From: Macrostomum lignano
Taxonomy: Eukaryota
NCBI GenBank assembly: GCA_002269645.1
Contig: NIVC01000481.1
Coordinates: forward strand, 1-64,000
DNA: 64,000 nucleotides
Reading direction: 5' to 3'
Shown: piece after piece, positions 19,090 through 41,377 of the stretch
Layout of the letters: every line of letters begins with the position of its first letter
Position numbering within the stretch: position 1 is the stretch's first letter
Position numbers and translations under genes: made by a program
Notes under the pieces: model-generated
What the model was told of the DNA's origin: nothing
The model's input: only the letters and a program-made list of their open reading frames with translations
Database searches by the model: none

Positions 19090-21623
19090 ATGCCTCTAGC
19101 CAGAGATCTGTTGCACCCATCTCTCAGCCAAGAGAAGCGAAAGCACAAGAAAAAGCGTCTGGTTCAGTCACCAAATTCCTGTTTTATGGATGTGAAGTGT
19201 GCAGGTAAGGACATTCAAGAATCATATAGCAATAATTTCAGTGTGTCCAAAATTTTAAACGCCATTGATAGTTAACTAAATCTTCAGACTGTCTAAAAAT
19301 CACCTCAGACAAATCTTCAGACTGTCTAAAAATCACCTCAGACAAATCTTCAGACTGTCTAAAAATCACCTCAGACAGATCTTCAGGCTGGCTAAAAATC
19401 ACCTCAGACAAATCTTCAGACTGTCTAAAAATCACCTCAGAAAGATCTTCAGGCTGGCTAAAAATCACCTCAGACAAATCTTCAGGCTGGCTAAAAATCA
19501 CCCCAGACAGATCTTCAGGCTGGCTAAAAATCACCCCAGACAGATCTTCAGGCTGGCTAAAAATCACCTCAGACAAATCTTCAGGCTGGCTAAAAATCAC
19601 CCCAGACAGATCTTCAGTCAGACTGTCTAAAAATCACCTCAGACAGATCTTCAGGCTGGCTAAAAATCACCTCAGACAAATCTTCAGACTGTCTAAAAAT
19701 CACCTCAGAAAGATCTTCAGGCTGGCTAAAAATCACCTCAGACAAATCTTCAGGTTGGCTAAAAATCACCCCAGACAGATCTTCAGACTGTCTAAAAATC
19801 ACCTCAGACAAATCTTCAGACTGTCTAAAAATCACCTCCGACAGATCTTCAGTCAGACTGTCTAAAAATCACCTCAGACAAATCTTCAGGCTGGCTAAAA
19901 ATCACCTCAGACAAATTTTCAGGCTGGCTAAAAATCACCTCAGACAAATCTTCAGGCTGTCTAAAAATCACCTCAGACAAATCTTCAGGCTGTCTAAAAA
20001 TCACCTCAGACAAATCTTCAGGCTGTCTAAAAATCACCTCAGACAGATCTTCAGTCAGACTGTCTAAAAATCACCTCAGACAGATCTTCAGGCTGGCTAA
20101 AAATCACCTCCGACAGATCTTCAGGCTGGCTAAAAATCACCTCAGACAAATCTTCAGGCTGGCTAAAAATCACCTCAGACAGATCTTCAGGCTGGCTAAA
20201 AATCACCTCAGACAGATCTTCAGGCTGGCTAAAAATCACCTCAGACAAATCTTCAGGCTGGCTAAAAATCACCTCAGACAGATCTTCAGGCTGGCTAAAA
20301 ATCACCTCAGACAGATCTTCAGGCTGGCTAAAAATCACCTCCGACAGATCTTCAGTCAGACTGTCTAAAAATCACCTCAGACAAATCTTCAGGCTGGCTA
20401 AAAATCACCCCAGACAGATCTTCAGACTGTCTAAAAATCACCTCAGACAAATCTTCAGACTGTCTAAAAATCACCTCCGACAGATCTTCAGTCAGACTGT
20501 CTAAAAATCACCTCAGACAAATCTTCAGGCTGGCTAAAAATCACCTCAGACAAATTTTCAGGCTGGCTAAAAATCACCTCAGACAAATCTTCAGGCTGTC
20601 TAAAAATCACCTCAGACAAATCTTCAGGCTGTCTAAAAATCACCTCAGACAAATCTTCAGGCTGTCTAAAAATCACCTCAGACAGATCTTCAGTCAGACT
20701 GTCTAAAAATCACCTCAGACAGATCTTCAGGCTGGCTAAAAATCACCTCCGACAGATCTTCAGTCAGACTGTCTAAAAATCACCTCAGACAAATCTTCAG
20801 GCTGGCTAAAAATCACCTCAGACAGATCTTCAGGCTGGCTAAAAATCACCTCCGACAGATCTTCAGTCAGACTGTCTAAAAATCACCTCAGACAGATCTT
20901 CAGACTGGCTAAAAATCACCTCAGACAGATCTTCAGACTGTCTAAAAATCACCTCAGACAGATCTTCAGACTGTCTAAAAATCACCTCAGACAGATCTTC
21001 AGACTGTCTAAAAATCACCTCAGACAGATCTTCAGACTGTCTAAAAATCACCTCAGACAGATCTTCAGGCTGGCTAAAAATCACCTCAGACAAATCTTCA
21101 GACTGTCTAAAAATCACCTCAGACAGATCTTCAGGCTGGCTAAAAATCACCTCAGACAAATCTTCAGGCTGGCTAAAAATCACCTCAGACAGATCTTCAG
21201 GCTGGCTAAAAATCACCTCAGACAGATCTTCAGGCTGGCTAAAAATCACCTCAGACAGATCTTCAGGCTGGCTAAAAATCACCTCAGACAGATCTTCAGG
21301 CTGGCTAAAAATCACCTCAGACAGATCTTCAGGCTGGCTAAAAATCACCTCAGACAGATCTTCAGGCTGGCTAAAAATCACCTCAGACAGATCTTCAGGC
21401 TGGCTAAAAATCACCTCAGACAAATCTTTAGACTAAAATTTAACAGTGCAAAATGTTCCCTAATCTGATTCTATAACCCTCAGGCTGCCTGAAGATCACC
21501 ACCGTGTTCTCGCACGCGCAGACTGTTGTGGTGTGTGCCGGATGCAGCACCATCCTCAGCCAGCCTACTGGTGGCAAAGCTCGCCTCACCGAGGGCTGCT
21601 CGTTTCGTAATAAAAGCTACTGA
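19090..21623 (+). CDS. RPS27: 40S ribosomal protein S27 (eS27), 84 aa; exons 19090-19204 and 21484-21623
   Basis: [11 protein letters not shown]...[63 protein letters not shown]; four-Cys finger intact; phase-1 intron; AATAAA near 21674. Confidence 0.98.
19275..21430. repeat. 27 bp minisatellite (TCTTCAGGCTGGCTAAAAATCACCTCAGACAGA-like), with occasional 31 bp variants, filling the RPS27 intron
   Basis: About 78 units; 4 bp GTCA insertions recur. Confidence 0.97.
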
Positions 21624-21804
21624 ATTGCTGAATTTAACCATGCCTGAGTCCTGTAGCTGGTCTGTTTTTTGTGAATAAATAAAATATTTAAACAATTTGT
21701 GGAAAGAAAAGGTAAATAATGAGCTCGTGATAATTCTTTTGATGATCTTTTTTATTTTCATAAAATCTATGTACGCGTAGTGTAAGCGTTACAAGTGAAG
21801 TGAT

Positions 21805-22675
21805 TTCCGGATCTTGTACAAACTGCTGAGATTACTGGATCTTGTACAAACTGCTGAGATTACTGGATCTTGCACAAACTGCTGAGATTACTGGATCTTG
21901 TACAAACTGCTGAGATTACTGGATCTTGTACAAACTTCTGAGATTTCCGGATCTTGTACAAACTGCTGAGATTACTGGATCTTGTACAAACTGCTGAGAT
22001 TACTGGATCTTGTACAAACTGCTGAGATTACTGGATCTTGTACAAACTGCTGAGATTACTGGATCTTGTACAAACTGCTGAGATTACTGGATCTTGTACA
22101 AACTGCTGAGATTACTGGATCTTGTACAAACTGCTGAGATTTCTGGATCTTGTACAAACTGCTGAGATTACTGGATCTTGTACAAACTGCTGAGATTACT
22201 GGATCTTGCACAAACTGCTGAGATTACTGGATCTTGTACAAACTGCTGAGATTACTGGATCTTGTACAAACTTCTGAGATATCTGGATCTTGTACAAACT
22301 GCTGAGATTACTGGATCTTGTACAAACTGCTGAGATTACTGGATCTTGTACAAACTGCTGAGATTACTGGATCTTGTACAAACTGCTGAGATTACTGGAT
22401 CTTGTACAAACTGCTGAGATTACTGGATCTTGCACAAACTGCTGAGATTACTGGATCTTGCACAAACTGCTGAGATTACTGGATCTTGTACAAACTGCTG
22501 AGATTACTGGATCTTGTACAAACTTCTGAGATATCTGGATCTTGTTCAAACTGCTGAGATTACTGGATCTTGTTCAAACTGCTGAGATTACTGGATCTTG
22601 TACAAACTGCTGAGATTACTGGATCTCGTACAAACTGCTGAGATTACTGGATCTTGTACAAACTTCTGAGATTTA
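21805..22675. repeat. 28 bp minisatellite (TGGATCTTGTACAAACTGCTGAGATTAC)n just 3' of RPS27
   Basis: About 31 near-identical units. Confidence 0.97.
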
Positions 22676-23949
22676 AATATCCTTTTTGTTGGACGAACTT
22701 TTTGGCAGTCCAGGTTATATAGGGATCTTGTACGTTACATGTACACCGCTGAGATTTCGGGATGTTTGTACTGCTAAGCCAAGATCTTTGGGGAACCTCG
22801 CATTCCTACAACACAAACTCGTACGTTGTTACTTATTCAGAGATTATTATTATGATGCAAGATACACTTGACTAGAGTATTGGATACTTTTTCCTAAGAG
22901 TATCGAACTGTTGAGCTACAATAGTAAGTTTATTTAATAATAATAAACTAATTATAGTAGTATCTGTTGCATGCACTCAGATCAGCTAGGTAAATCGCCG
23001 GCCATCATATACACTTGAAAGATCTATGATCGTTTACTTGTGCTTACTTTTTCCAATTTGCCTCCGGTATAGCTAGTGAATTCGTACAGACTAAAGTTAG
23101 TATATCAGTTTACTGTTTACTGATACTGCATGTATACAGTAGCCACAGGGAAAATGTTCAAATATTTGCATTACTGTATATACCGTGACCTGTCGGCTCA
23201 GGTCGTGGTAGATGAGAGAGTGATTTGGATTAGGGTCAGGTGTACTTTGAATATAAAGATTCAGATTGTTTCTAGATATATCATTTTGCATAGTTGGCAT
23301 TTCTGCAGGCTATTGCAGACACTGTGGTCTCTAATGAGTCATATAATGGCGCGAGAGTGACTTTAAATGAGCTAAAATGAGTCATATTCGCGCTGAATTG
23401 CTTTGAGTCAGCCAAAATGAATCATAATGGCGTTGAATATGACTTTGAGTGAGCCAAACTGAATCATAATGACGTTGAATGACTTTGAATGAGCCAAACT
23501 GAATCATGTTAACCAAGCGTGCATAAGGCGTTTAGAGTGTACCACTGCGTAACAAATGAGGGATGCTGTACACCCTATGGTGCACTGGTAGCTTGTACAT
23601 GTATTATAACCGGTTGCGGTAACAAGGAATTATAATTTTTTTAAGAAAGCTCAAGTGAATTAATTTTACGCACCTGCATCATGATATGCTTCCTTTCAGT
23701 CTAATTGCGATTCTAAGTAATATACATGTAAGTAAAACACTCGTATGAAGCTCATATCCCTAAAATCTCAGTTAGACATTCAATTGGTTGCAAATGAAAC
23801 AATGCTGATTGGCCAGTGCGTAGAAATGTATGCTAATATATTTTCAGTATAGTGTCTATGTTTGGATCGAATCTGTCTTTTCTACTGCACACTGCTATAT
23901 CTAAACTGTACATCTGCCACTATATGTTCCTGTGCCGATTGTGCTCCAG

Positions 23950-24098
23950 CGTGTACCGGCACAGGGTGCAGTCGGACGAAGCGCAGCGACTTGACAGGGT
24001 TAGTCAGGACCCGATCCCGACGGCCGAACTTGTGAAGGAGTACCGGAAACGCCGCCGGAATAAAGGGCTGCATTATGAGTTCAAGGTGAGGGTTTTTC

Positions 24099-24130
<32 letters not shown>

Positions 24131-24187
24131 CTCTATCTATCTATCTATCTATCTATCTCTCTATCTATCTATCTATCTATCTATCTC

Positions 24188-24235
<48 letters not shown>

Positions 24236-24274
24236 CTATCTATCTATCTCTCTATCTATCTATCCATCTATCTA

Positions 24275-24321
<47 letters not shown>

Positions 24322-24322
24322 G

Positions 24323-24362
<40 letters not shown>

Positions 24363-24363
24363 A

Positions 24364-24414
<51 letters not shown>

Positions 24415-24426
24415 CTATCTATCTAT

Positions 24427-24458
<32 letters not shown>

Positions 24459-24987
24459 CTATCCATCTATCTAGTTGCGCTCTAAAATGAAAATGAAGGT
24501 AAAAATATTTGCTTGTTAAAATTTCAGGCAATCGAGGTGATTTCAGCCGGGGACAACCAGTCAGTGAGTTCAGTGGAATTCTCCTTCCTACATTCGCCTA
24601 TCATTCGAGCTATAAGCAGTTGTTCCTAGCTCTATAAATATTCGAAGCTTAACTACACAAAGATCGTGACTTCGCACACAATGAAGTCAGTAGTATGTTC
24701 ACGTCAGGTATTAGCAATATAATATGCAAGTATAATGCTTACATATTCATGCAACCACACAGACTTTCGCGTAATATTATCCGGACTAAAGCGTGCTATT
24801 GTATATCCCAGCAGTGATTCCTTCTTATCCAACCTTGTCTATACTCTGCAACCCTGCAGTAGATGGACACTGCACAGCTCAATTTTCTTAGAAATGAGCT
24901 GGAGATCGATGAGGAGCGCATGAGGAGACAGACAGACAGACAGACAGACACACAGACAGACACACAGACAGACAGACAGACAGACAC

Positions 24988-25034
<47 letters not shown>

Positions 25035-28000
25035 CACAGACAGACACACAGACAGACACAGACAGACAGACAGACACACAGACACACAGACAGACACACA
25101 GACAGACACACAGACAGACAGACAGACAGACACACAGACACACAGACAGACACACTAACAGACACACAGACACACAGACAGACAGACAGCTGGCCTATTT
25201 AAAGTGCATCAGCAGTGCCAGCTGGATGCCAGCACAGGCGTCAGAGCAGGTCACAGAAGCGCCGCAGATTTCCCTATTCCTGTGTGCTGCGCGCGTGTGA
25301 CAAGATAATTAGTAAGAAAAAATATTGGCCAACAAATGGGCAAAATAATTGCTAGGAATTAGCTGTTTGCATTTGCATTTCGCCTCTTCATCAGTTGGGG
25401 GGCTGTAGTGGGTTGCCGAGTCAGCCTCGCTGCTGACGGTCCCGCATTGAACACTTCCGGGAGGCGGAGTTATATCCGGCTGCCGGTCCCCAGCTCCTGT
25501 TGTCTGACTAAAGCTACCAATTATCCCATTCGAATCCGATCCAGGCAGAATCTTCCCAATTCGAATTTTTCTAGTTAAGCATAGCAAGATTGATTGGGGA
25601 TTTTCGAAAGAGAGAATTCAGGGTGTCCCCCTGTGCATGCTTACAGCATCTGTTGATTGCATCTGGCGCCGAGGCGGTGCCAAGGAGACCCCGAACCAGA
25701 GCCTTGGAGTGACAACTTCTATCCAAAACCCGCTATAGTTTTTAAGACATTTTTTCAATTTGAAAAATTGTGTATTAAAACAACTTCTGTCAACACAACA
25801 TATCGGTCTGCCTATAAAATTGTCACAAAAAGTGAGCTGGGGCAATTCCAGACCCCTTGGTTCCGGACATCTTTGGCTGCGGTCATGCAAACTTTTGTGT
25901 TTGTCAAGGATTAATTGAGGATTTAGGGATGGGGACGCATTCAGCAGCCAGAAATCTGGTCTTGATCCTGCAGGAATGGAAGGGGCTCTGCCTCTTTACA
26001 AAATTTCAGTAGTGCAAAATGCAAATCTTCAATTTTTTAGGACAATTGACTTAAAGTTCAAACTCTTGATATGTTTAAATAAAGTAATCGATAAAATAAA
26101 GTACAAGATGTACTATAAAAGTTAAAGCATATGGTACATAGCATATGGAAGTTTAGACTAAACTGGCACACCTGCTGATGTCAGACTGTGACAATCCCGA
26201 TGTCAGACTGATATTCCAGGCCATTTTGTCGCTTCTATAAAAGAAACTGCCCACAATGATTTCAGGCCAGCATTCGCAGCAAAGGACAGCACAAAGTGGC
26301 CGACAACGCCAAATCGGAGGTGAATCGCGGAAAAAATCTAAGCGATCGAGTTTTGCCATGTATGTTAATTTTATGGTTCATCAATTTCTAAGAAAATTAA
26401 AACATCCTTTAATAAAAAGCTTACTGTTCGTTGATTGGCTGATAACGGGCGTGCTTATAAATCTATCACGAGTCATAGATATAAACGCGTAATTCTAAAA
26501 ATAGAAAGCTGACGTCATTAAATTATATATGCTTCTAAAAATAGAATCAGACGTCACTAATGTGAAGTTAATGATTTTTGTAAATTTTTAATGACTTTTC
26601 TTCTATTTTCAGATGAACGAAATATTGTCCTGCTGGACAATGGAAAGTACATTAATGCTAGTTGGGTAGATGTAGGTGACTCATCCTATTGATTTAATAA
26701 TAATTATCATTATGCAAGCATTAGTGTTTTTGACATGCAAAAAATCGTTTCCATCAAGGGCTACAATCAGCCAAAAAAGTTCATCGCAGCGCAGGGTCCG
26801 CTTTCTAACACGAAAGAAGACTTCTGGCACATGATTTGGCAATATAATTGCCATTGTATTGTCATGGCAACCAATCTGTTTGAGCATGCTAGGGTAAGCG
26901 AAACGGTGAAACTAAGAGCATATTTTATAAACTTGAGTTCGAACTAATCCATTATAAAATTCCTATATAACAGCAACAGTGCGACAAATATTGGCACAAC
27001 GTGCACGCGAAATTCGGAGATATTAGCGTCTGGCTTGACAATGTCTACTCTACTGCCGAGTACGAGACTCGAGTGTTCAGATTATGCAAGGTGAGTACAA
27101 GGCTGATGAAAACTTAAGACAAGTTTAAATAAGTCAATTTTTTTCTGGTTCAAAGAGTAGTAAATGGCGTCATTACTGTTTGTTTTGTATGCATAGAAAC
27201 TGACGTCATTTTAGTGCTGCTTTCTATAAATAGAATCTGACGTCAATTTAATGCTTCTTTCTATAAATAGAAACTGATGTCATTTTTGCTTGTTTCTATA
27301 AATGGAAACTGATACCATTAGTGCTCTATTTATAAATAGTAACTGACGTCATTTTAATGCTTCTTTATATAAATAGAAACTGACGTCACTTTCGTTTGTT
27401 TCTATAAATAGAAGCTTGCATAAATTCATTGCTTACTTTTAAAATAGAAAAGATTACAGTCCATTTGTTGTTAGTCTCTTACACTATAGAGACGAGTATC
27501 ACGTGATTTTATTGCCGAGGTTGGCCTGATCTTTTTCTACCTTTCCAGACCACCGAGCAGCAGAATCCGCGATATGTGCGCCAATATCAGTTCAAAAACT
27601 GGAGCCAGCACGATCCGCCACTGCCGGCGGCTGTCATAGAAATTCGTCGAAAAGTGCACGACTGGGTAGCTGGAAAAACGGAGCCAATTGTGGTGCACTG
27701 CAGGTGAGTCTTTTAAGTAAGGGCCGCTGTACAAACTATGTGAGCGTGTGTATGAGTGCTTGTCTGCGAATGTGCTCAGGAGCCAGCGAAATGGGCCGAA
27801 TTGCCGTCACTCTTGCAATCATTTTTAACACCGACCAGCGACGGCGCCGGCCGCACCGGCACTTACATCTGCATCGACGTCGAGCTCAGCAGAGTCGAAG
27901 CCGGCCGGCCCGTCGATATTCTGCGCCAGACGCTGGCGTTGCGTAAAGCTCGACCGGGATTGGTTGGCAACCTCTGCCAGTACCGGCTGGTGTACGAGAC

Positions 28001-31000
28001 CGTCTGCGCCTGCGTCACCTGCCGACAGACGAGCGTCAGGGTGTTCCAGTTTGTTCGCAGAGCTCGCAATCTAGCCAAACGGGAAACAACTGCCGCCTCC
28101 GCTAGCGGCGGAAAGTCGTCCACGACGACGACGGCGGGTCGCAGCGGATTCGAGGCCGAGTTCGACAGTCTGTCGGCGCTGGCGCGGCCGTTGAGCGTCG
28201 GCGACTGCGCCGGCGGGCATCGAGCGGAGAACCGGTGGAAGAGCCGCGACGTTATGGTGCAGCCGCGTGAGTGGAGGCTGGGGGGGCCTCTAGAGATAAT
28301 CCTACCATATTTATGGATAATCCCATCGAATATATGGATAATCCCATCGAATATATGGATAATCCTACCGAATCTATAGATAATCTTATTAAATCTATAG
28401 ATAATCCTACCGAATCTATAGATAATCTTATTAAATCTATAGATAATCCTACCGAATCTATGGATAATCCTATCGAATCTATAGATAATCCTTTCGAATC
28501 TATAGATAATCCTATCGAATCTATGGATAATCCTTTCGAATCTATAGATAATCCTACCGAATCTATAGATAATCCTACCGAATCTATAGATAATCTTATT
28601 AAATCTATACATAATCCTTTCGAATCTACAGATAATCCTATCGAATATACAGATAATCCTTTCGAATCTATAGATAATCCTTTCGAATCTATAGATAATC
28701 CTATCGAATATACAGATAATCCTTTCGAATCTATAGATAATCCTTTCGAATCTATACATAATCCTATCGAATCTATACATAATCCTACCGAATCTATAGA
28801 TAATCCTATCGAATCTATGGATAATCCTTTCGAATCTATAGATAATCCTATCGAATCTACAGATAATCCTTTCGAATCTATACATAATCCTATCGAATCT
28901 ATACATAATCCTACCGAATCTATAGATAATCCTACCGAATCTATACATAATCCTATCGAATCTATAGATAATCCTATCGAATATACAGATAATCCTTTCG
29001 AATCTATAGATAATCCTTTCGAATCTATACATAATCCTATCGAATCTATACATAATCCTACCGAATCTATAGATAATCCTACCGAATCTATAGATAATCC
29101 TACCGAATCTATAGATAATCCTACCGAATCTATAGATAATCTTATCGAATCTACAGACAATCCCATCGAATCTATAGATAATCCTATCGAATCTATAGAT
29201 AATCCCATCGAATCTATGGATAATCCCATCGAATCTATGGATAATCCTATCGAATCTACAGATAATCCTATCGAATCTATACATAATCCTACCGAATCTA
29301 TAGATAATCCTATCGAATCTATACATAATCCTACCGAATCTATAGATAATCCTTTCGAATCTATAGATAATCCTACCGAATCTATAGATAATCCTACCGA
29401 ATCTATAGATAATCTTATTAAATCTATAGATAATCCTTTCGAATCTATAGATAATCCTATCGAATCTACAGATAATCCTATCGAATCTACAGATAATCCT
29501 TTCGAATCTACAGATAATCCTTTCGAATCTACAGATAATCCTTTCGAATCTATAGATAATCCTTTCGAATCTATAGATAATCTTATCGAATCTACAGACA
29601 ATCCCATCGAATCTACAGATAATCCTATCGAATCTATACATAATCCTACCGAATCTATAGACAATCCTACCAGTAATCCTACAATCCAAAATCTTTGAAT
29701 TTGAATCTCATTTCTTAGGTGACATGCTTGCACATACTTTGACCAAATCAATGATTTTCATGCCGCAACTCAGCCGAGCGAGCCAGGCCCTACCTCATGA
29801 CTCAGGACTCTGGCACCGACTTTATCAATGCTGTTTACGTTGACGTACGTTTATTGACGTCTTTGTTTTATTAATAAATACTTGTTGTCCTTGTTGGCTT
29901 AATGGATACAGAATTTTTTCCATTCCTACAAATCAAACTGCAGGGTCATTGCCGGGCTAATCAGTACATTGTCACCCAGTGGCCTCTGAAAAACACTGTT
30001 GGCGACTTTTGGAAGCTGATTCGAGATCATCAAGTCAGGGTGGCTGTTGTGCTGTCTGAGTTCACTGGCAAGCTCGGAAAGGTGAGATTTGGGTGGGTGA
30101 GATTCGGGAAGGTGAGATTCGGGTGGGTGGAATTTGGGTGGGTGGGATTCGGGAAGGTGGGATTCGGGTGGGTGGGATTCGGGTGGGTGGGATTCGGGTG
30201 GGTGGGATTTGGGTGGGTGGGATTCGGGAAGGTGGGATTCGGGTGGGTGGGATTCGGTTGGGTGGGATTTGGTGGGTGGGATTCGGGAAGGTGGGATTCG
30301 GGTGGGTGGGATTCGGGAAGTTTAGATTGGAGAGGGTGAGATTCGGGAATGTGAGATTCGAGAGCGTGAGATTCGGGAAGGTGGGATTCGGGTGGATGAG
30401 ATTCAGGAAGATGAGATTCGGGAGGGTGAGATTCAGGAGGGTGAGATTCGGTAGGATGAGATTCGGGAGGGGGAGATTCGGGTTGGTGGGATTCGGGAAG
30501 GTGAGGTTGAGATGATTGAGATTGAGATTGAGTCAAGTGAGATTAAGATGGGTGAGTTTGACATAGGGGTGAGATTAGGATGGGGTGAGATTGAGATGGG
30601 TGGATTGAGATAGGTGAGATTGAGATGGGTGAGATTGAGATGGGTGAGATTAAGATGGGTGAGATTAAGATGGTGAGATTGAGATGGGTGGATTAAGATG
30701 GGTGAGATTGATATGGGTGAGATTGAGATGGGTGAGATTGAGATAGGTGAGATCAAGATGGGTGAGATTAAGATGGGTGAGATTGATATGGGTGAGATTG
30801 AGATGGGTGAGATTGATATGGGTGAGATTAAGATGGGTGAGATTAAGATGGGTGAGATTGAGATGGGTGAGATTGAGATGGGTGAGATTGAGATGGGTGA
30901 GATTGAGATGGGTGAGATTGAGATAGGTGAGATTAAGATGGGTGAGATCAAGATGGGTGAGATTGAGATGGGTGGATTGAGATAGGTGAGATTGAGATGG

Positions 31001-34000
31001 GTGAGATTGAGATGGGTGAGATTAAGATGGGTGAGATTAAGATGGTGAGATTGAGATGGGTGGAATAAGATGGGTGAGATTGATATGGGTGAGATTGAGA
31101 TGGGTGAGATTGAGATGGGTGAGATTGAGATGGGTGAGATTAAGATGGTGAGATTAAGATGGGTGAGATTGAGATAGGTGAGATTGAGATGGGTGAGATT
31201 GAGATAGGTGAGATTGAGATGGGTGAGAGTGAGATGGGTGAGATTGAGATGGGTGAGATTGAGATGGGTGAGATTGAGATAGGTGAGATTGAGATGGGTG
31301 AGATTGAGATAGGTGAGATTGAGATGGGTGAGATTGAGATGGGTGAGATTGAGATAGGTGAGATTGAGATGGGTGAGATTGAGATGGGTGAGATTGAGAT
31401 GGGTGAGATTGAGATGGGTGAGATTGAGATGGGTGAGATTGAGATAGGTGAGATTAAGATGGGTGAGATTAAGATGGGTGAGATTGAGATGGGTGGATTG
31501 AGATAGGTGAGATTGAGATGGGTGAGATTGAGATGGGTGAGATTAAGATGGGTGAGATTAAGATGGTGAGATTGAGATGGGTGGAATAAGATGGGTGAGA
31601 TTGATATGGGTGAGATTGAGATGGGTGAGATTGAGATGGGTGAGATTGAGATGGGTGAGATTAAGATGGTGAGATTAAGATGGGTGAGATTGAGATAGGT
31701 GAGATTGAGATGGGTGAGATTGAGATAGGTGAGATTGAGATGGGTGAGAGTGAGATGGGTGAGATTGAGATGGGTGAGATTGAGATGGGTGAGATTGAGA
31801 TAGGTGAGATTGAGATGGGTGAGATTGAGATAGGTGAGATTGAGATAGGTGAGATTGAGATGGGTGAGATTGAGATGGGTGAGATTGAGATAGGTGAGAT
31901 TGAGATGGGTGAGATTGAGATGGGTGAGATTGAGATGGGTGAGATTGAGATGGGTGAGATTGAGATGGGTGAGATTGAGATAGGTGAGATTAAGATGGGT
32001 GAGATTAAGATGGGTGAGATTGAGATGGGTGGATTGAGATAGGTGAGATTGAGATGGGTGAGATTGAGATGGGTGAGATTAAGATGGGTGAGATTAAGAT
32101 GGTGAGATTGAGATGGGTGGAATAAGATGGGTGAGATTGATATGGGTGAGATTGAGATGGGTGAGATTGAGATGGGTTAGATTGAGATGGGTGAGATTAA
32201 GATGGGTGAGATTGAGATAGGTGAGATTGAGATGGGTGAGATTGAGATAGGTGAGATTGAGATGGGTGAGAGTGAGATGGGTGAGATTGAGATGGGTGAG
32301 ATTGAGATGGGTGAGATTGAGATAGGTGAGATTGAGATGGGTGAGATTGAGATAGGTGAGATTGAGATGGGTGAGATTGAGATGGGTGAGATTGAGATAG
32401 GTGAGATTGAGATGGGTGAGATTGAGATGGGTGAGATTGAGATGGGTGAGATTGAGATGGGTGAGATTGAGATGGGTGAGATTGAGGTGAGGTTTCGTGA
32501 AAAATATACAGCCAAGAAAATCTAAAAATGGTGCGATTTACAGACAAAAATAGACAGAAATATCAGAATCTCCCATACTTGAACCCGAGCGTTAATCTGA
32601 AGGACCTCCACTCCGCAGAGCTACCCCAGCTTCTGGCCCTCGGTCAAAGGCCAACCAACTGCATTTGGCGCCGTGTCGGCCGTTCTGCAAGACGAATTCA
32701 ATTGGTCCAATTGCGTCAGGGTGCAGCTGTGCCACCTTATTACAGTGAGTGCAGTCCGTTAGTATGACCTATGACCTATCTGCAGTACTGTCTATGACCT
32801 ATCCACTGACTATGACCTATCCACTGTCTATGACCTATCCACTGTCTATGACCTATCCACTGTCTATGACCTATCCACTGTCTATGACCTATCCACTGTC
32901 TATGACCTATCCACTGTCTATGACCTATCCACTGTCTATGACCTATCCACTGTCTATGACCTATCCACTGACTATGACCTATCCACTGACTATGACCTAT
33001 CCACTGTCTATGACCTATCCACTGTCTATGACCTATCCACTGTCTATGACCTATCCACTGTCTATGACCTATCCACTGACTATGAGCTAGTTACTGTCTA
33101 TGACTTATCTACTGTCTATATGACTTATCTATTGTCTATATGACCTATCCATAGTCTATATGACCTACAGTATCTACTGTATTTATATGACCTATCTACT
33201 GTCTATTACCTATATTACTATATACTGTCTATGACCTATGTACTATCTATACTGCTTTACTGATATACTGCCTATGGCCTATTCACTGTCTATGATCTAG
33301 GCTCGAATCTTCTACGAGCGTATATGACCTCAAAGCAATTTACGATTAGAACCCGAGGCTTCAAAGATGTACTCAAAAGCATCTCTGTAATACTGCATGC
33401 TGTTGGTGTTTTCAAAAGTCGATATCCCCACATGGATAGTAACTCACCCTCACTTCACCTTGTCGGCAATAGTTTACAAACCCACTTTTTCAGCCCCTTC
33501 AGTTTAGAAACTAATCGATAATATTGACTGCTGCCAAAATGATAAATAGGAAAAATTTGAAACCCCCCGCTTTGAACTAGAAGCACAAGTAAAAGAAAGC
33601 TGCGCCTCCCAAATATACATGACAAGCAAATAACACTGCTGTATTCTGAAGCCCGCATAAGCTAGCGAGTGAGACTAGACATTCCTAGACAATTCAAAAT
33701 CAGGGTTGCACTTCTGACAGCAACCCTAGATAATTCAGATCTGGGTTGCACTTCTGACAGCAACCGTAGACAATTCAGATCTGAGTTGCACTTCTGACAG
33801 CAACCCTAGACAATTCAGATCTGGATTGCACTTCTGACAGCAACCCTAGACAATTCAGATCTGGATTGCACATCTGACAGCAACCCTAGACAATTCAGAT
33901 CTGGATTGCACTTCTGACAGCAACCCTAGACAATTCAGATCTGGATTGCACATCTGACAGCAACCCTAGATAATTCAGATCTCGGTTGCACTTCTGACAG

Positions 34001-36019
34001 CAACCCTAGATAATTCAGATCTGGGTTGCACTTCTGACAGCAACCCTAGACAATTCAGATCTGGGTTGCACTTCTGACAGCAACCCTAGACAATTCAGAT
34101 CTGGGTTGCACATGACAGCAACCCTAGACAATTCAGATCTGGGTTGCACATCTGACAGCAACCGTAGACAATTCAGATCTGGATTGCATATCTGACAGCA
34201 ACCCTAGACAATTCAGATCTGGGTTGCACATCTGACAGCAACCGTAGACAATTCAGATCTGGGTTGCACATGACAGCAACACTAGACAATTCAGATCTGG
34301 GTTGCATATCTGACAGCAACCCTAGACAATTCAGATCTGGGTTGCACATCTGACAGCAACCCTAGACAATTCAGATCTGGGTTGCACTTCTGACAGCAAC
34401 CGTAGACAATTCAGATCTGGGTTGCACATCTGACAGCAACCGTAGACAATTCAGATCTGGGTTGCACATCTGACAGCAACCCTAGACAATTCAGATCTGG
34501 GTTGCACTTCTGACAGCAACCCTAGACAATTCAGATCTGGGTTGCACATGACAGCAACACTAGACAATTCAGATCTGGGTTGCACTTCTGACAGCAACCC
34601 TAGACATTAAAGAGAATTACAGTTACACTTGTAATAAACTGTACTGAAAACCATCCACCGATAACAGACGACCTCATCAAGGGTGTCTACCGCAGCCGCC
34701 GCAACCGACATCGCGGAGAATCACCGTCAGGCGCGGCCGCTGCTGCTGCTGTACCTGAAGAGCTGCTGGCAGCGAGGCCACAGATCGCCATCAGCCAACC
34801 ACGGCTTACTGGAGATCGCCTGCATCGCCGAGCTGGCAAATTGTCGCCTGTCAAGCGTCAGCCCGATTCTGGTTGTCAGCGAGTAAGCCATGGCCTAATA
34901 TTGCTACTTATTATAGTAGAAAAGTAGACATTTTTTAATCGGTTTTTTGATAAACGCAATAAAGAACTCTCTGCAGTGTCTGAATGGAAAGACGCGCTGG
35001 GAGAAAATCTCGTACTCCAAATAGTTTTTTTAAAACTACCCTTTCACTACTTATTAGTAGCATAAGGACGTTGAGTTTTTTAGTACTTTTTTACAACGGA
35101 AAGCTCATTCCCATTTTTTAAGCAACGGAGTGTCTCGTTGCGGCGTCTTCTGCGTGCTGCACATGTCAATGGACAAGATGCGGTACGAAGGCGAGATTGA
35201 CATCTTCAGGGCTGTGGAGAAAGTGCGCAGAAACCGGCCGCAGTTGATTGACAGCTTGGTGAGCGCTTAGCAAAGCAAGATGCATTCTGTATGCAGGTAC
35301 TACAGGTGGAAGGGGGGCCGTAGCCCAGCGGTAGCGCAGCTACTCTGGTGTGCCAGCGACCCAGGCTCGATTCCAAGTGCAGTCACATTAATTTGGGGCT
35401 GAATTGGAATCTCGGCTTGGCTCTGCTCGCGCAATTAACGGCCTTGAGAGCCAACCCCCCCAAGGCGCAGTGAAGTGTACATGCCTAACGATAATATAAA
35501 GTTAGGGCCGCTGTACACTCCTGTGTGAGTGTGTGCCTGCGTACGTATCCGCGCTTGTATGCCTGCTCAGGGGAGTCGGCGGAATGGGCAGTAATGCCTC
35601 TCGCCGGTTGTGCCTATGTCGCTTAAAGTGCGCCAGGGTGCACACAACCCCCCTGCCTCTAATAATAATAAACTACAGGTGGAGAAGCGCGAATATGTTG
35701 CATTCTTAAATGGCGCCAAAATTGTCTCAGTGGCGCTAAAATGGACCCAGATGGCGCCAAGTATGTCTCCCTGGCGCTAAAAAGCCCCATGTGGCGCCAA
35801 AATAGTCTAAAAAACCGAAGCAAAGACTATAATGAGCAACTTAAAATCTGATTTGCATTTCAACACACATTGCAGATTGAGTACCAGTTGTGCTATTCAG
35901 TGATGCAATTGCTAGTCGAATATTTTTTCGCTGGCCGAGTTGAAATACTCGAAGACCAGACGATGCGTCTCGTGGATCTCAGCAACTTCCCCGTAACGGT
36001 TAATGGCAACAGCAAGTGA
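23950..36019 (+). CDS. Classical tandem-domain (D1+D2) protein tyrosine phosphatase, predicted pseudophosphatase, at least 650 aa, start exon not found. Exons 23950-24085, 26266-26359, 26613-26671, 26759-26893, 26974-27090, 27549-27703, 27839-28266, 29774-29844, 29944-30081, 32619-32744, 34668-34882, 35123-35258, 35876-36019
   Basis: All 12 introns are GT-AG with compatible phases. PTP motifs [61 protein letters not shown] and RRNRPQLI occur in order. Confidence 0.93.
24098..24472. repeat. (TATC)n/(TGTC)n microsatellite starting just after a PTP splice donor
   Basis: Direct observation. Confidence 0.97.
24925..25190. repeat. (CAGA)n/(CACA)n microsatellite
   Basis: Direct observation. Confidence 0.97.
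26490..27415. promoter_or_regulatory. Degenerate intronic repeat of about 36 bp, with units pairing a MEF2-type site and a CRE
   Basis: Perfect TGACGTCA at 26510, 27201, 27238, 27344 and 27381; YTA(A/T)4TAG at 26495, 26535, 27224, 27261, 27330 and 27402. Function is not shown. Confidence 0.4.
28295..29670. repeat. 21 bp minisatellite (GAATCTATAGATAATCCTATC)n, PTP intron
   Basis: About 65 units; accounts for the 608, 499 and 475 aa ORFs. Confidence 0.97.
30082..32490. repeat. 15 bp G-rich minisatellite grading from GGGTGGGTGGGATTC to ATGGGTGAGATTGAG, with a higher-order block of about 520 bp, filling a PTP intron
   Basis: Direct observation; the block recurs with starts near 31159, 31680 and 32190. 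Confidence 0.97.
32765..33300. repeat. 18 bp minisatellite (TATGACCTATCCACTGTC)n, decaying at its 3' end
   Basis: Direct observation. Confidence 0.93.
33690..34607. repeat. 40 bp minisatellite with an internal hairpin (TAGACAATTCAGATCTGGGTTGCACTTCTGACAGCAACCC)n
   Basis: About 23 units; GGGTTGC...GCAACCC inverted repeat in each. Confidence 0.95.
35311..35671 (+). mobile_element. Full-length tRNA-derived SINE, about 360 bp, in the last PTP intron
   Basis: A box TAGCCCAGCGG, B box GGCTCGATTCC, (AAT)n tail and a perfect 12 bp TSD ACTACAGGTGGA (35299-35310 and 35672-35683). Confidence 0.9.
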
Positions 36020-36159: not shown

Positions 36160-36810
36160 GTAAGAGGCGAGTCAAGGGGAAGGCAGACGAGGGTTAGGGT
36201 GAGGGAGAGACAGAGGGGAAGGCAGGGGAGAGGGAGAGACAGAGGGGAAGGCAGGGGAGAGTGTGAGACAGAGGGGGAAGGCAGGGGAGAGGGTGAGACA
36301 GAGGGGGAAGGCAGGGGAGAGGGTGAGACAGAGGGGGAAGGCAGGGTAGAGGGTGAGATAGAGGGGAAGGCGAAGAGGGCGAGACAGAGGGGAAGCCAGA
36401 GGAGAGGGTGAGACAGAGGGGAAGGCGGGGGAGAGGGTGAGACAGAGGGTGAAGGCAGGGGAGAGGGTGAAACACAGGGGGAAGGCAGGGGAGAGGGTGA
36501 GACAGACGGGGGAGGCAAGGGAGAGGGTGAGACAGAGGGTGAAGGCAGAGGAGAGGGTGAAACACGGGGAAGGCAGGGGAGAGGGTGAGACAGACGGGGG
36601 AGGCAAGGGAGAGGGTGAGACAGAGTGGAAGGCAGGGGAGAGGGTGAGACAGAGGGGGAGGCAGGGGAGAGGGTGAGACATAGAGGAAGGCAGGGGAGAG
36701 GGTGAGACACATAAAGGAAGGCAGGGAAGAGGGTGAGACAGAGGGGAAGGCAGGGGAAAGGGTGAGACAGAGGGGAGGCGAGGGAGAGGGTAAGACAGAG
36801 GGAAAGCAGA
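36160..36810. repeat. About 30 bp purine-rich minisatellite (GAGGGTGAGACAGAGGGGGAAGGCAGGGGA)n
   Basis: Direct observation, downstream of the PTP stop codon. Confidence 0.93.
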
Positions 36811-38972: not shown

Positions 38973-41308
38973 TCATGAATAACGAGGCTGACTATAGCCC
39001 CAGGCTCCTTGGTGGCCGGGATGCTGAAACCCGCCATGGAAATGCTGATTATGATGATGAGGCTGCTGCTGAGGCGGCATCGGCGGCTGCTGCTGAACAT
39101 ACTGAGGGTGGTGACCGTAAGGCTGGGGCTGCCGATGATAAGAAGCTGCGGGATGATGATAAAAATTCATTGATTGCTGGTGCATCTGCGGCGGAGGCGG
39201 CGGCTGGTGCTGAGGCTGGTGCTGGTGCTGGTAGTGCCCGGCTTGTGGCGCCCGCACCTTCTTCTCGTTCTGATCGGCGTAGCGAACCTGGGGAGATAAT
39301 TAGATGTGTGTGAATTATTACACATATTGAAGGCCTGGCGGCAGAGTACAGATAGGGAAAGCTAATAGAACAGTCTAGGACTATCTAGAACAGACAGCAG
39401 GATAATCACAAGGAAATATGACAGGCCAGGAAAGGAAGACGAAGAAGAGGCGAGACAGACAATACAGACAGGGAAGGAGAGGCAAGACAGTCAGGGAAAG
39501 ACAGACAAGACAGACGAAAGGATAGACAAGACAGACAGGGAAAAACAGACAAGACAGACGAAAGGATAGACAAGACAGACAGGGAAGGACAGACAAGACA
39601 GACAGGGAAGGACAGACAAGACAGACAGGGAAAAACAGACAAGACAGACAGGGAAGGACAGACAAGACAGACAGGGAAAAACAGACAAGACAGACAGGGA
39701 AGGATAGACAAGACAGACAGGGAAGGACAGACAAGACAGACAGGGAAAAACAGACAGGACAGACAGGGAAGGACAGACAAGACAGACAGAGAAGGACAGG
39801 CAAGACAGACAGGGAAGGACAGACAATACAGACAGGGAAGGACAGACAAGACAGACAGGGAAGGACAGACAAGACAGACAGGGAAGGACAGACAAGACAG
39901 ACAGGGAAGGACAGACAGGGAAAACAGACAAGACAGACAGGGAAGGACAGACAAGACAGACAGAGAAGGACAGGCAAGACAGACAGGGAAAACAGACAAG
40001 ACAGACAGGGAAGGACAGACAAGACAGACAGAGAAGGACAGGCAAGACAGACAGGGAAAACAGACAAGACAGACAGGGAAGGATAGACAAGACAGACAGG
40101 GAAAATAGACAATACAGACAGGGAAGGATAGACAATACAGACAGGGAAGGATAGACAAGCCAGACAGGGAGGGATAGACAAGACAGACAGGGAAGGACAG
40201 ACAAGACAGACAGGGAAGGATAGACAAGACAGACAGGGAAGGACAGACAAGACAGACAGGGAAAAACAGACAAGACAGACAGGGAAAAACAGACAATACA
40301 GACAGGGAAAAACAGACAAGACAGACAGGGAAGGACAGGCAAGACAGACAGGGAAAACAGACAAGACAGACAGGGAAGGATAGACAAGACAGACAGGGAA
40401 AATAGACAATACAGACAGGGAAGGATAGACAATACAGACAGGGAAGGATAGACAATACAGACAGGGAAGGATAGACAATACAGACAGGGAAGGATAGACA
40501 AGCCAGACAGGGAGGGATAGACAAGACAGACAGGGAAGGACAGACAAGACAGACAGGGAAGGATAGACAAGACAGACAGGGAAGGACAGACAAGACAGAC
40601 AGGGAAAAACAGACAAGACAGACAGGGAAAAACAGACAAGACAGACAGGGAAAAACAGACAATACAGATAGGGAAGGACAGAAAAACTCAGAAATAGACC
40701 TCTCCCTAATGGAAAGATGCATATTTAAAAGAGCAACCAGAATCATATTTTCTATGTTTCCGCAGAAAAAAAACGGCTATTAATAAATATTGAACTAGTG
40801 TCACCTGTATTGGCAAAGAGTCCGAGTTAGGCCAGGGTTTCCCATTCATCGAATTCATAGCCTGCTCGGCAGACGACCTGGTCTCGTACAGACAGAATCC
40901 CACACCCCGACAAGCTCCATTGGGATCTAGCAGCGCTTTGCAATTAATAACCGATCCGTATTGATCCAGCACGGATTGCAGCGCTTCCTGAGTCAGCCAA
41001 GACGGCAGATTCGATAAGCGCAGCTTACAATTTCTAGTTTGATCGCTGCGCAATCGAGCAAATGCCACTTTAAGCGTTTTATTGCCAACTTGTCGGCGAT
41101 TGACAGCCGCAATGGCCTGGTTAGCCAGCTCTTGAGTGTCGTATTCGCAAAATCCGTAACCGTAGCTATAGCCTGTGGCGTTGTTGCGACAGATTTTTAC
41201 AGATTTAACTCCGGGTACTTCGCTATCGAATATCTGTCTTAATTGTTCGTCCGTCATGTCTTGGGGTAGATAGTTGACAATTAAGTTTGTGTCGGAGTAT
41301 TGAGCCAT
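38973..41308 (-). CDS. Sxl: Sex-lethal-like (ELAV/Sxl family) two-RRM RNA-binding protein with a His/Gln/Pro-rich tail, about 272 aa; exons 41308-40805 and 39287-38973
   Basis: TNLIVNYLPQDMTD and TGYSYGYGF are Sxl-type (ELAV/Hu has PQNMTQ and GQSLGYGF); linker LKVAFAR; RRM2 RGVGF; the phase-0 splice gives LPIQ/VRYAD; no third RRM. Orthology needs a phylogeny. Confidence 0.8.
39410..40680. repeat. About 26 bp minisatellite (GACAGACAAGACAGACAGGGAAG[G/A]A)n filling the Sxl-like intron
   Basis: Direct observation; accounts for the 411, 446 and 382 aa Cys/Leu/Ser ORFs. Confidence 0.95.
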
Positions 41309-41377
41309 GCTTAACTTTTTGAACACTGTTGTCTTGTTTTTAAGCTATTGCACTGGTATTTGTTGAATCAGAAATGT

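What the first reader, a model, noticed from the sequence alone, without database searches (positions are those of the whole stretch)
23950..36019. Tandem-domain PTP in which both domains are pseudophosphatases, with an IA-2-like D1 signature
Seen after manual splicing. D1: pTyr loop KNRY is KNLS, WPD is WSQ, the P-loop is [10 protein letters not shown], and the Q-loop MVQT is LVGN. D2: the P-loop is VVSDNGVSRCG (catalytic Cys replaced by Ser) and WPD is WQR. Established: the KNRY Tyr, WPD Asp, P-loop Cys and Q-loop Gln are needed for catalysis; HCSDGAGR is the inactive IA-2/PTPRN signature, but IA-2 has a single domain; tandem-domain PTPs normally keep an active D1. The frame is intact over 13 exons, so it looks maintained rather than decaying, and no ectodomain or TM exon is visible in the 2.3 kb after RPS27. 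Inference: a cytosolic double-dead scaffold, substrate trap or redox sensor (D1 Cys retained). It may relate to the invertebrate Ptp36E-type group; that is recalled, not verified.
Basis: partly seen in the sequence, partly recalled or inferred. Interest (0 to 1): 0.7.

Follow-up and report, generated by a model that had tools for sequence, protein, structure and literature searches.

The report
Conserved double-dead tandem tyrosine-phosphatase homologue
This is an intact flatworm gene for a protein with two tyrosine-phosphatase-like domains that both lack catalytic residues; it belongs to an old, conserved and almost unstudied invertebrate family, so the case is real but not unique.

Summary
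The gene model needs two corrections. Conserved coding sequence starts at ATG 23924, not at an acceptor at 23950. A conserved 36-nt exon (24528-24563) was missed, giving 14 exons and 671 aa.

The gene is not an oddity of this genome. Its best relative is a Macrostomum lignano protein (56% identity) that also lies just downstream of RPS27. About 70 relatives from flatworms, annelids, brachiopods, bryozoans, molluscs, arthropods and nematodes share the pattern: no WPD Asp in D1, D1 Cys kept, and D2 Cys always Ser. They also share an invariant block, G[DE]CAGGHRxENRxK[SN]R. The window protein keeps 95 of the 100 most conserved family positions, so it is maintained rather than decaying.

The IA-2 likeness is local to the P-loop. 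Over the whole domain, D1 is closer to R2B/R2A/R4 D1 domains, and D2 is closest to PTPRE/PTPRA D2. No TM or ectodomain exon is visible.

The most likely role is a non-catalytic phosphotyrosine-binding scaffold, comparable to human PTPRU. The function and the Ptp36E link were not tested.

The parts
23924..24085 (+). Coding exon 1: MFLCRLCSS..., juxtamembrane-like segment and start of D1. An alternative in-frame ATG lies at 23858.
   Evidence: The ORF is open from 23837. DNA similarity to M. lignano starts exactly at this ATG. The donor is GT. The best 19-aa hydropathy upstream was about 1.1 by hand calculation, and no window reached the 1.6 cut-off, so no TM.
24528..24563 (+).
   Evidence: AG/GT flanked and in phase. 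The orthologous exon AIELISVGDKQS lies at L001 10563-10598.
26266..26359 (+). Coding exon 3, holding the D1 pTyr-recognition loop KNLS (26332-26343) in place of KNRY.
26613..26671 (+). Coding exon 4 ([20 protein letters not shown]).
26759..26893 (+). Coding exon 5 ([15 protein letters not shown]...FEHAR).
26974..27090 (+). Coding exon 6 (QQCDKYWHN...RLCK).
27549..27703 (+). Coding exon 7, holding the D1 WPD-loop equivalent WSQHD (27600-27614) and the first part of the P-loop (VVHC).
27839..28266 (+). Coding exon 8. It holds the rest of the D1 P-loop (SDGAGRTG), the D1 Q-loop LVGNLCQY (27960-27983), the Ser/Thr-rich linker, and the family signature [17 protein letters not shown] (28200-28250) at the start of D2.
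29774..29844 (+). Coding exon 9 ([24 protein letters not shown]).
29944..30081 (+). Coding exon 10 ([15 protein letters not shown]...).
32619..32744 (+). Coding exon 11 ([11 protein letters not shown]...).
34668..34882 (+). Coding exon 12, holding the D2 WPD-loop equivalent CWQRGH (34764-34781) and the start of the D2 P-loop (ILVVS; Ser replaces the catalytic Cys).
35123..35258 (+). Coding exon 13: the rest of the D2 P-loop (DNGVSRCG) and the start of the D2 Q-loop.
35876..36019 (+). Coding exon 14, holding the end of D2 and the C-terminal tail. The stop codon TGA is at 36017-36019.
   Evidence: The C-terminal YF[FY][AS]GR..IL.DQ stretch is shared with M. lignano.

Best explanation
The locus is the orthologue, in a macrostomid-like flatworm, of a protostome-wide family of tandem PTP-domain proteins. 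In that family neither domain can carry out canonical tyrosine dephosphorylation.

Shown:
- The gene is intact and conserved.
- D1 keeps the nucleophile Cys and the P-loop Arg. It lacks the pTyr-loop Tyr, the WPD general acid, the first Q-loop Gln, and the P-loop Ala (replaced by Asp, as in IA-2).
- D2 has Ser for the catalytic Cys and no WPD Asp or Q-loop Gln. Its P-loop Ser, Gly, Arg and Gly are invariant across the family, as is the rim block G[DE]CAGGHRxENRxK[SN]R.

Inferred:
- The protein reads or binds phosphotyrosine rather than removing it. D2, which resembles the engineered Cys-to-Ser plus Asp-loss substrate traps, holds a phosphorylated or otherwise anionic ligand.
- D1 adds a second pocket that is catalytically crippled and may be sensitive to oxidation.
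- Together they would sequester or scaffold pTyr proteins and compete with active PTPs, as shown for human PTPRU.
- In this species the protein probably has no TM helix. It may reach membranes through its Cys-rich N-terminus (MFLCRLCSS); that step is speculation.
For: - Gene model and motifs.
- Two Y_phosphatase domains.
- Orthologue in M. lignano: 56% identity over 682 aligned positions, with RPS27 immediately upstream on the same strand in both genomes and collinear exons.
- Family-wide motif table: about 70 sequences from Spiralia and Ecdysozoa all have the degenerate D1 and D2 motifs, whereas the next-best hits (deuterostome PTPRA/PTPRE) have HCSAGxGRTG in both domains.
- Column counts in 40 sequences: D2 Ser566, Gly569, Arg572 and Gly574 are 40/40; D1 His239 is 40/40 and Cys240 is 39/40. 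No member has WPD in D1, and only the molluscs keep an Asp at the acid column, in an F-N-D context.
- Constraint: the window protein keeps 95 of 100 columns that are at least 90% conserved. D2 is more conserved than D1, with mean major-residue frequency 0.66 against 0.58.
- Fold: an AlphaFold model of the M. lignano orthologue has pTM 0.81, with most of both PTP cores at pLDDT 90 or above. It superposes on the PTPRE, LAR, PTPRS and PTPRA tandem structures with target TM 0.87-0.93.
- Precedent: PTPRU has two pseudophosphatase domains, keeps the D1 Cys, is redox sensitive and binds the substrates of its paralogues (PMC7320164).
Against: - No binding, activity or expression data exist for this gene or, in the literature I could search, for any family member.
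- Near-universal retention of the D1 Cys and Arg could equally mean residual or altered catalysis.
- Several spiralian members, this one included, have an acidic residue two positions beyond the lost Asp (WSQHD). It might substitute as the general acid.
- AlphaFold is only moderately confident (pLDDT 54-74) about the most conserved D2 block, so the shape of the D2 pocket is not established.
The structural evidence comes from the orthologue.
- The 5' end has not been mapped.
Confidence: 0.6

Rival explanations
1. D1 is still an enzyme. It would use a displaced acid (Asp223 or His222 in WSQHD) or act on a non-protein substrate such as phosphoinositides, as reported for PTPRN2 and PTPRQ. On this reading the protein is an atypical phosphatase rather than a pseudophosphatase.
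For: - D1 Cys is kept in 39/40 and Arg in 37/40 family members, and a His at W+3 in 25/40.
- Spiralian members carry Asp or Glu at W+4.
- Changed WPD motifs can switch substrate class (PTPRQ), and some 'dead' PTPs have reported activities (PMC7320164).
- PTPRN2 is reported to dephosphorylate inositol phospholipids (PMC11802530).
Against: - Four separate catalytic elements are altered at once.
- The W+4 acid is absent in cestodes, arthropods and nematodes, so it is not a family feature.
- The first Q-loop Gln is lost in 39/40 sequences.
- The P-loop Ala-to-Asp change is one of the two substitutions held responsible for the inactivity of IA-2 (Magistrelli 1996, as cited in PMC11802530 and PMC7320164).
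Confidence: 0.2
2. The protein is a receptor after all. Unseen 5' exons, lying upstream of RPS27 or escaping detection, would encode a signal sequence, a short ectodomain and a TM helix, as in its annelid, brachiopod, bryozoan and molluscan relatives.
For: - Owenia, Lingula, Watersipora, bivalve, octopus and barnacle members have a TM segment (19-aa hydropathy about 1.6 to 2.6) after 25-55 extracellular residues.
- In M. lignano the frame upstream of the conserved Met is open and hydrophobic (FLSLLVCITFVLSTPSMFV; hydropathy about 2.1 by hand calculation on the sequence), and the deposited model is marked 5' partial.
Against: - In the window the equivalent stretch is not TM-like (about 1.1, with Lys and His residues; hand calculation on the sequence), and it is not conserved with M. 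lignano.
- The only hydrophobic window in the 2.3 kb upstream lies in AT-rich sequence about 80 nt after the RPS27 stop and has no start codon.
- Cestode and arthropod members also lack a TM, and bivalves and barnacles have TM-less isoforms.
Confidence: 0.15
3. The locus is a decaying pseudogene, and the motif losses are neutral damage.
For: Many catalytic residues are lost, and the introns are swollen with satellites.
Against: - There is no stop or frameshift in 2016 nt, and all 13 introns are GT-AG.
- 95 of 100 highly conserved family positions are retained.
- The same substitutions are fixed across phyla.
- The orthologue is syntenic.
Confidence: 0.02
4. The gene is an IA-2/PTPRN (R8) orthologue that has acquired a second domain.
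For: The D1 P-loop segment scores best against IA-2 and PTPRN2 among single-domain structures (33.6 and 31.2 bits, against 29 or less for the others; 51.1 bits over 69 aa).
Against: - Over the whole domain IA-2 and PTPRN2 rank below the R2B, R2A, R4, R5 and R3 D1 domains (139 against 168 bits; 242 against 308 bits with the family profile).
- D2 is a genuine D2, closest to PTPRE/PTPRA D2.
- There are no IA-2-type luminal or TM exons.
- IA-2 has a single domain (PMC11802530).
Confidence: 0.03

Closest known systems
Macrostomum lignano BOX15_Mlig005009g1 and the unnamed protostome family it represents. Automatic names include 'receptor-type tyrosine-protein phosphatase kappa / epsilon-like / mu-like'. 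One nematode member is labelled 'Protein T13H5.1 b' after C. elegans T13H5.1.
   Same: Tandem architecture; every degenerate motif in D1 and D2; the CAGGHR...K[SN]R and PP[ED]..RPY blocks; RPS27 microsynteny and exon order with M. lignano.
   Different: - Only 56% identical to M. lignano.
- The D2 loop reads WQ instead of the family's WP (36/40 have Pro).
- There is no TM helix, unlike the annelid, brachiopod, bryozoan, mollusc and barnacle members.
Human PTPRU (R2B), the published receptor PTP with two pseudophosphatase domains (PMC7320164).
   Same: Tandem D1-D2 with both domains predicted or shown to be inactive. D1 keeps the Cys but has a non-canonical pTyr loop and WPD. The proposed role is non-catalytic substrate binding and competition.
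   Different: - PTPRU has a large MAM-Ig-FN3 ectodomain and a TM helix.
- Its D1 changes are WPE, GSRQ and a Thr in the P-loop, which differ from those here.
- It is a vertebrate paralogue of active R2B enzymes, not an orthologue of this family.
IA-2 / PTPRN and PTPRN2 (R8).
   Same: The D1 P-loop segment scores best against IA-2 and PTPRN2 among single-domain structures. That the letters [10 protein letters not shown] are identical to IA-2, and that IA-2 also lacks the WPD Asp, is recalled and not read from an alignment. Both are classed as pseudophosphatases.
   Different: IA-2 has a single PTP domain and is a dense-core-vesicle transmembrane protein. Whole-domain similarity to it is low compared with other receptor PTPs. 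The likeness is most simply explained by convergence at a few positions.
R4 receptor PTPs (PTPRA, PTPRE).
   Same: - They are the next-best full-length database hits after the family.
- D2 is closest to PTPRE/PTPRA D2 (184 and 169 bits).
- The best structural superposition is on PTPRE (target TM 0.93).
- Spiralian family members have a short ectodomain plus a TM helix. Some also have TM-less isoforms, as I recall for PTPRE.
   Different: R4 D1 (and, weakly, D2) are catalytically competent, with canonical motifs. The D1 profile scores slightly higher on R2B and R2A D1 than on R4 D1, so the relationship is unresolved.
Natural pTyr-binding pseudophosphatases such as STYX and C. elegans EGG-4/EGG-5 (recalled from the literature, not examined here).
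   Same: The catalytic Cys is lost while the phosphate-binding loop is kept. They work by binding phosphorylated partners.
   Different: They have single domains from other PTP subfamilies. No sequence relationship beyond the superfamily was tested.

Membership tests
Classical PTP superfamily with tandem D1-D2 architecture | Two Pfam PF00102 (Y_phosphatase) domains in one chain | tested here: met
   E = 2.8e-110, two stretches; both halves align to the D1 and D2 of PTPRS.
Classical PTP superfamily with tandem D1-D2 architecture | Tandem fold and domain packing like the solved RPTP D1-D2 structures | tested here: met
   Tested on the M. lignano orthologue only: pTM 0.81 and target TM 0.87-0.93 to PTPRE, LAR, PTPRS and PTPRA.
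Classical PTP superfamily with tandem D1-D2 architecture | Catalytic motifs KNRY, WPD, HCSAGxGR[ST]G and QTxxQY in D1 | tested here: not met
   D1 has [19 protein letters not shown] and VGNLCQY.
Protostome CAGGHR tandem pseudo-PTP family | D1 P-loop HC-x-[DSNC]-G-x-G-[RK]-[ST]-[GA] combined with no WPD Asp | tested here: met
Protostome CAGGHR tandem pseudo-PTP family | D2 P-loop V-S-x-[DN]-G-x-x-R-x-G, with Ser in place of the catalytic Cys | tested here: met
   The window has VVSDNGVSRCG. Ser, Gly, Arg and Gly are 40/40 in the family alignment.
Protostome CAGGHR tandem pseudo-PTP family | Signature G[DE]CAGGHRx[ED]NRxK[NS]R...PP[ED]xxRPY at the start of D2 | tested here: met
   The window has [29 protein letters not shown]. 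The signature is absent from the PTPRA, PTPRE and PTPRC hits.
Protostome CAGGHR tandem pseudo-PTP family | Orthology supported by gene order | tested here: met
   RPS27 lies directly upstream on the same strand in both the window and M. lignano.
   No Drosophila sequence surfaced. Few papers mention Ptp36E and none describes its sequence. My own recalled gene number was wrong: CG10975 is Ptp69D.
IA-2 / PTPRN (R8) | Single PTP domain | tested here: not met
   Two domains are present. IA-2 has one (PMC11802530).
IA-2 / PTPRN (R8) | P-loop with Asp in place of Ala ([10 protein letters not shown]) | tested here: met
   The window sequence reads [10 protein letters not shown]. IA-2 and PTPRN2 are the top single-domain matches to the 24-aa P-loop segment. 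The IA-2 letters themselves were recalled, not displayed.
IA-2 / PTPRN (R8) | Whole-domain similarity highest to R8 | tested here: not met
   Bit scores with the family D1 profile: IA-2 242 and PTPRN2 240, against PTPRK 308, PTPRT 303, PTPRE D1 285 and PTPRA D1 282.
R4 (PTPRA/PTPRE) | Short ectodomain plus TM helix | tested here: not met
   None in the window, although spiralian family members have one. The 5' end is unmapped.
R4 (PTPRA/PTPRE) | Catalytically competent D1 | tested here: not met
   At motif level only. Enzyme activity cannot be tested with these tools.
R4 (PTPRA/PTPRE) | Phylogenetic placement with R4 | tested here: inconclusive
   The D2 profile is closest to PTPRE/PTPRA D2, and the next full-length hits are R4. 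The D1 profile, however, is slightly closer to R2B and R2A. No tree with all subfamilies could be built from the sequences on hand.
PTPRU-type double pseudophosphatase (functional class) | No catalytic activity in either domain, with substrate binding retained | not testable with these tools
   Motif evidence only. This needs biochemistry.

The most novel reading that the evidence does not exclude
The family would be the protostome counterpart of the R4 receptor PTPs (PTPRA/PTPRE), converted before the split of Spiralia and Ecdysozoa from a pTyr eraser into a dedicated pTyr reader. D2 would be a natural Cys-to-Ser substrate trap, with its pocket rim rebuilt as the invariant CAGGHR...K[SN]R block. 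D1 would be a Cys-retaining regulatory pocket sensitive to oxidation. In lineages such as macrostomids, cestodes and arthropods the protein would have lost its membrane anchor.
Probability: 0.2. Interest if true: 0.65.

Novelty: new member of a known kind. Interest (0 to 1): 0.4.

Why it matters
Pseudophosphatases are increasingly seen as readers and competitors in phosphotyrosine signalling. In humans, PTPRU is described as the only receptor PTP with two dead domains.

This locus shows that a different double-dead tandem PTP is fixed across flatworms, annelids, molluscs, arthropods and nematodes, so it predates the split of those phyla. Its D2 is more conserved than its D1, and its catalytic Cys is invariably Ser.

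The family has members in tractable animals: Macrostomum (RNAi), C. elegans (T13H5.1-like, by annotation) and insects. It has almost no functional literature. It is therefore a reasonable entry point for asking what a non-catalytic PTP pair does. For this particular window the gene is an ordinary orthologue.

Tried and rejected
2. **Source genome record.** The species is inferred only as a relative of Macrostomum.
3. **Ptp36E link.**
   - Literature searches gave only incidental mentions.
   - The exhaustive representative search merges the insects under one Timema representative, so no Drosophila entry could be seen.
4. **Full phylogeny against all classical PTP subfamilies.** Not possible, because reference sequences for most subfamilies could not be fetched. 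I used profile scores against PDB chains as a ranking instead, and these do not amount to a tree.
5. **dN/dS against M. lignano.** Not attempted. At 56% amino-acid identity, synonymous sites are saturated.
6. **Candidate exon at about 24863-24925** (NELEIDEER...). Rejected: it has no donor site and runs into an (AGAC)n array.
7. **tRNA and Rfam scans of the locus.** Both negative.
8. **Pseudogene and IA-2-orthologue readings.** Both rejected (see rivals).

Full report
**What is in the sequence**

The window is eukaryotic DNA, rich in mini- and microsatellites. On the + strand between about 23.9 and 36.0 kb, stop-free segments carry recognisable PTP-domain peptides. Joining them at canonical AG/GT sites gives one open frame ending at TGA 36017-36019. 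Pfam scores the product as two Y_phosphatase domains (E = 2.8e-110). It aligns over both halves to the tandem D1-D2 structures of PTPRS, LAR, PTPRA and PTPRE.

- D1: KNLS for KNRY, WSQHD for [14 protein letters not shown] for VHCSAGxGRTG, and LVGNLCQY for MVQTxxQY.
- D2: KSRD for KNRY, CWQRGH for WPD, VVSDNGVSRCG (Ser for the catalytic Cys), and QLIDSLIEY.

The roles of these four motifs in catalysis are established knowledge and are summarised in PMC7320164.

**Corrections to the gene model**

The best database relative is a Macrostomum lignano protein (P0001). Its locus (L001) allowed two corrections.
1. Nucleotide similarity between the two species begins exactly at ATG 23924 and is absent upstream. 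An in-frame ATG at 23858 cannot be excluded.
2. A 36-nt exon at 24528-24563 ([12 protein letters not shown]) was missed. It has AG/GT flanks and a clear counterpart (AIELISVGDKQS) in M. lignano.

The corrected model has 14 coding exons and 671 aa. It is 56% identical to P0001 over 682 aligned positions, with collinear exon pieces. In both genomes the gene lies directly downstream of RPS27 on the same strand. This supports orthology and suggests the window comes from a relative of Macrostomum.

**It is a family, not a one-off**

After P0001, the homology search returned about 70 clusters. They come from an annelid (Owenia, Capitella), a brachiopod (Lingula), a bryozoan (Watersipora), cestodes, molluscs, chelicerates, crustaceans, insects and nematodes. 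Only after these came the canonical PTPRA/PTPRE proteins of amphioxus, echinoderms and vertebrates.

A motif table and column counts on 40 sequences show that the degenerate state is the rule in this family:
- No member has WPD in D1. Only the molluscs keep an Asp at that column, in an F-N-D context.
- The first D1 Q-loop Gln is lost in 39/40.
- The P-loop Ala is Asp in 28/40.
- The D1 His and Cys are kept in 40/40 and 39/40.
- In D2 the catalytic Cys is Ser in 40/40, and the P-loop Gly, Arg and Gly are also 40/40.
- The best-conserved stretch of the whole protein is G[DE]CAGGHRx[ED]NRxK[NS]R...PP[ED]xxRPY, on the D2 pTyr-loop rim. The PTPRA, PTPRE and PTPRC hits lack it.

An exhaustive HMMER scan of 1.84 billion representatives found further signature-bearing members. 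Those with names were again molluscs, nematodes, crustaceans and ticks. One nematode protein is labelled 'Protein T13H5.1 b' after the C. elegans gene T13H5.1. In the papers I could search, that gene is mentioned only in lists. No deuterostome or cnidarian member appeared among the 120 listed hits or the named representatives. Further unnamed environmental representatives could not be assigned to a taxon.

**Maintained, not decaying**

The window protein keeps 95 of the 100 alignment columns that are at least 90% conserved among 39 relatives. The five differences are D-to-E, Y-to-F, F-to-Y, K-to-T, and P-to-Q in the D2 loop. All 13 introns are GT-AG and there is no frame disruption. D2 is more conserved across the family than D1: 57 against 43 columns at 90% or more, and mean major-residue frequency 0.66 against 0.58.

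**How IA-2-like is D1?**

For the 24-aa P-loop segment, the best single-domain PDB matches are IA-2 (33.6 bits) and PTPRN2 (31.2 bits), against 29 or less for the others. Over the 69 aa from the P-loop to the Q-loop, IA-2 still leads modestly (51 against about 45 bits).

Over the whole domain the order reverses.
- With the single sequence: PTPRK D1 168, PTPRT 167, PTPRS D1 161 and IA-2 139 bits.
- With a family D1 profile: PTPRK 308, PTPRT 303, PTPRM 294, an R2A D1 290, PTPRE D1 285, PTPRA D1 282, IA-2 242 and PTPRN2 240 bits.

The resemblance is therefore a local signature, most simply explained by convergence. IA-2 also has one domain, not two (PMC11802530).

The D2 profile is closest to true D2 domains: PTPRE D2 184, PTPRA D2 169 and PTPRD D2 167 bits, with D1 domains at about 152 or lower. 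The tandem arrangement is therefore inherited. Overall affinity lies with the R4 and R2 types, but it is not resolved, because I could not assemble a reference set for a proper tree.

**Fold**

The tool would not accept the spliced window protein, so I modelled the M. lignano orthologue with a 39-sequence family alignment.
- pTM is 0.81, and most of both PTP cores are at pLDDT 90 or above.
- Foldseek superposes the model on tandem RPTP structures with target TM 0.87-0.93. The best match is PTPRE.
- The CAGGHR...PPERARPY block has only moderate confidence (pLDDT 54-74), so the D2 pocket is not defined.

**Membrane anchor**

Spiralian members have a TM helix after a short ectodomain of 25-55 residues, and so do two of the barnacle sequences. 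Bivalves and barnacles also have TM-less forms. Cestode, insect, tick and nematode members show no TM.

In the window, the stretch upstream of Met 23924 is not TM-like (hydropathy about 1.1 by hand calculation, with Lys and His residues). The 2.3 kb back to RPS27 holds only a 28-mer satellite and one hydrophobic window, which lies in the AT-rich sequence just after the RPS27 stop. In M. lignano the upstream frame is open and hydrophobic, which could be a real TM or a translated pyrimidine tract.

**Mechanism**

Shown: loss of the canonical catalytic apparatus in both domains, strong purifying constraint, and an invariant Ser-Gly-Arg-Gly P-loop and rim block in D2.

Inferred: the protein binds phosphotyrosine rather than hydrolysing it.
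- D2 matches the classical engineered trap (Cys to Ser plus loss of the acid) while keeping the phosphate-binding Arg. It is the most constrained part of the protein.
- D1 keeps Cys and Arg but lacks the acid, the water-activating Gln and the Tyr that stacks on the substrate ring.

The nearest worked example is PTPRU. Its two domains are inactive, its D1 Cys is redox-reactive, and it binds the substrates of its active paralogues (PMC7320164).

The main rival is residual or altered catalysis by D1. This could involve a displaced acid (WSQHD has Asp at W+4, as do several spiralian members but not cestodes, arthropods or nematodes) or lipid substrates, as reported for PTPRN2 and PTPRQ.

**Novelty and verdict**

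I found no functional study of that family in the searchable literature. I could not verify that Drosophila Ptp36E belongs to it. The general idea of a receptor-type PTP with two dead domains is published for PTPRU. I therefore rate the finding as a new member of a known kind, with moderate interest attached to the family rather than to this locus.

Noticed in passing
window 35312-35452 (+), in intron 13; L001 about 6960-7100 (-): An element of about 140 bp with a tRNA-like 5' part is 98-99% identical between the window and the M. lignano locus, although the coding regions are only 56% identical at the protein level. There is one copy in the window. ARAGORN and Rfam find nothing. It is probably a SINE shared among Macrostomum-like genomes.
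   Followed up: partly
window 30081-32486 (intron 10): A 2.4-kb array of a 15-mer (GTGAGATTGAGATGG, about 130 copies) starts exactly at the exon-10 donor. Every unit carries a GTGAG donor-like motif, so the intron begins with more than 100 potential cryptic 5' splice sites.
   Followed up: no
window 21802-22673, 24099-24473, 24926-25189, 28289-29669, 32787-33159, 33684-34606, 36197-36806: The upstream spacer, most larger introns and the 3' flank are filled with satellites: a 28-mer x31, (ATCT)n, (AGAC)n, a 21-mer x66, an 18-mer, a 40-mer x23 and a 29-mer. Similar arrays occur all over the window.
   Followed up: no
window about 21477-21623 (+): The last coding exon of RPS27 (…[45 protein letters not shown]). 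The same neighbour in the same orientation is found in M. lignano.
   Followed up: partly
window about 2000-5930 (+) and 40706-41326 (-): Neighbouring genes, judged by eye from ORF translations: exons that look like a DOCK-like C-terminal (DHR-2-type) region, and an ELAV/Hu-like RRM protein. Neither was checked against a family library.
   Followed up: no
P0123 (XP_077232336.1): A family member with arthropod-type motifs (HCNDGCGRTG, CVVSLNGKSRAG) is deposited as an uncharacterised protein of the plant Tasmannia lanceolata. It is probably arthropod or mite contamination of that assembly.
   Followed up: no
family alignment: Molluscan members have a further-degraded D1: F-N-D in place of W-P-D and a P-loop reading HCRCGGG[KR]T[AS]. 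Their D2 keeps the family signature. This suggests that D2 is the indispensable part.
   Followed up: partly
M. lignano model, residues about 405-445: The most conserved block of the family (CAGGHR...KSRD...PPERARPY) is the least confidently modelled part of the D2 core (pLDDT 54-74). It may be a ligand- or partner-dependent loop.
   Followed up: no
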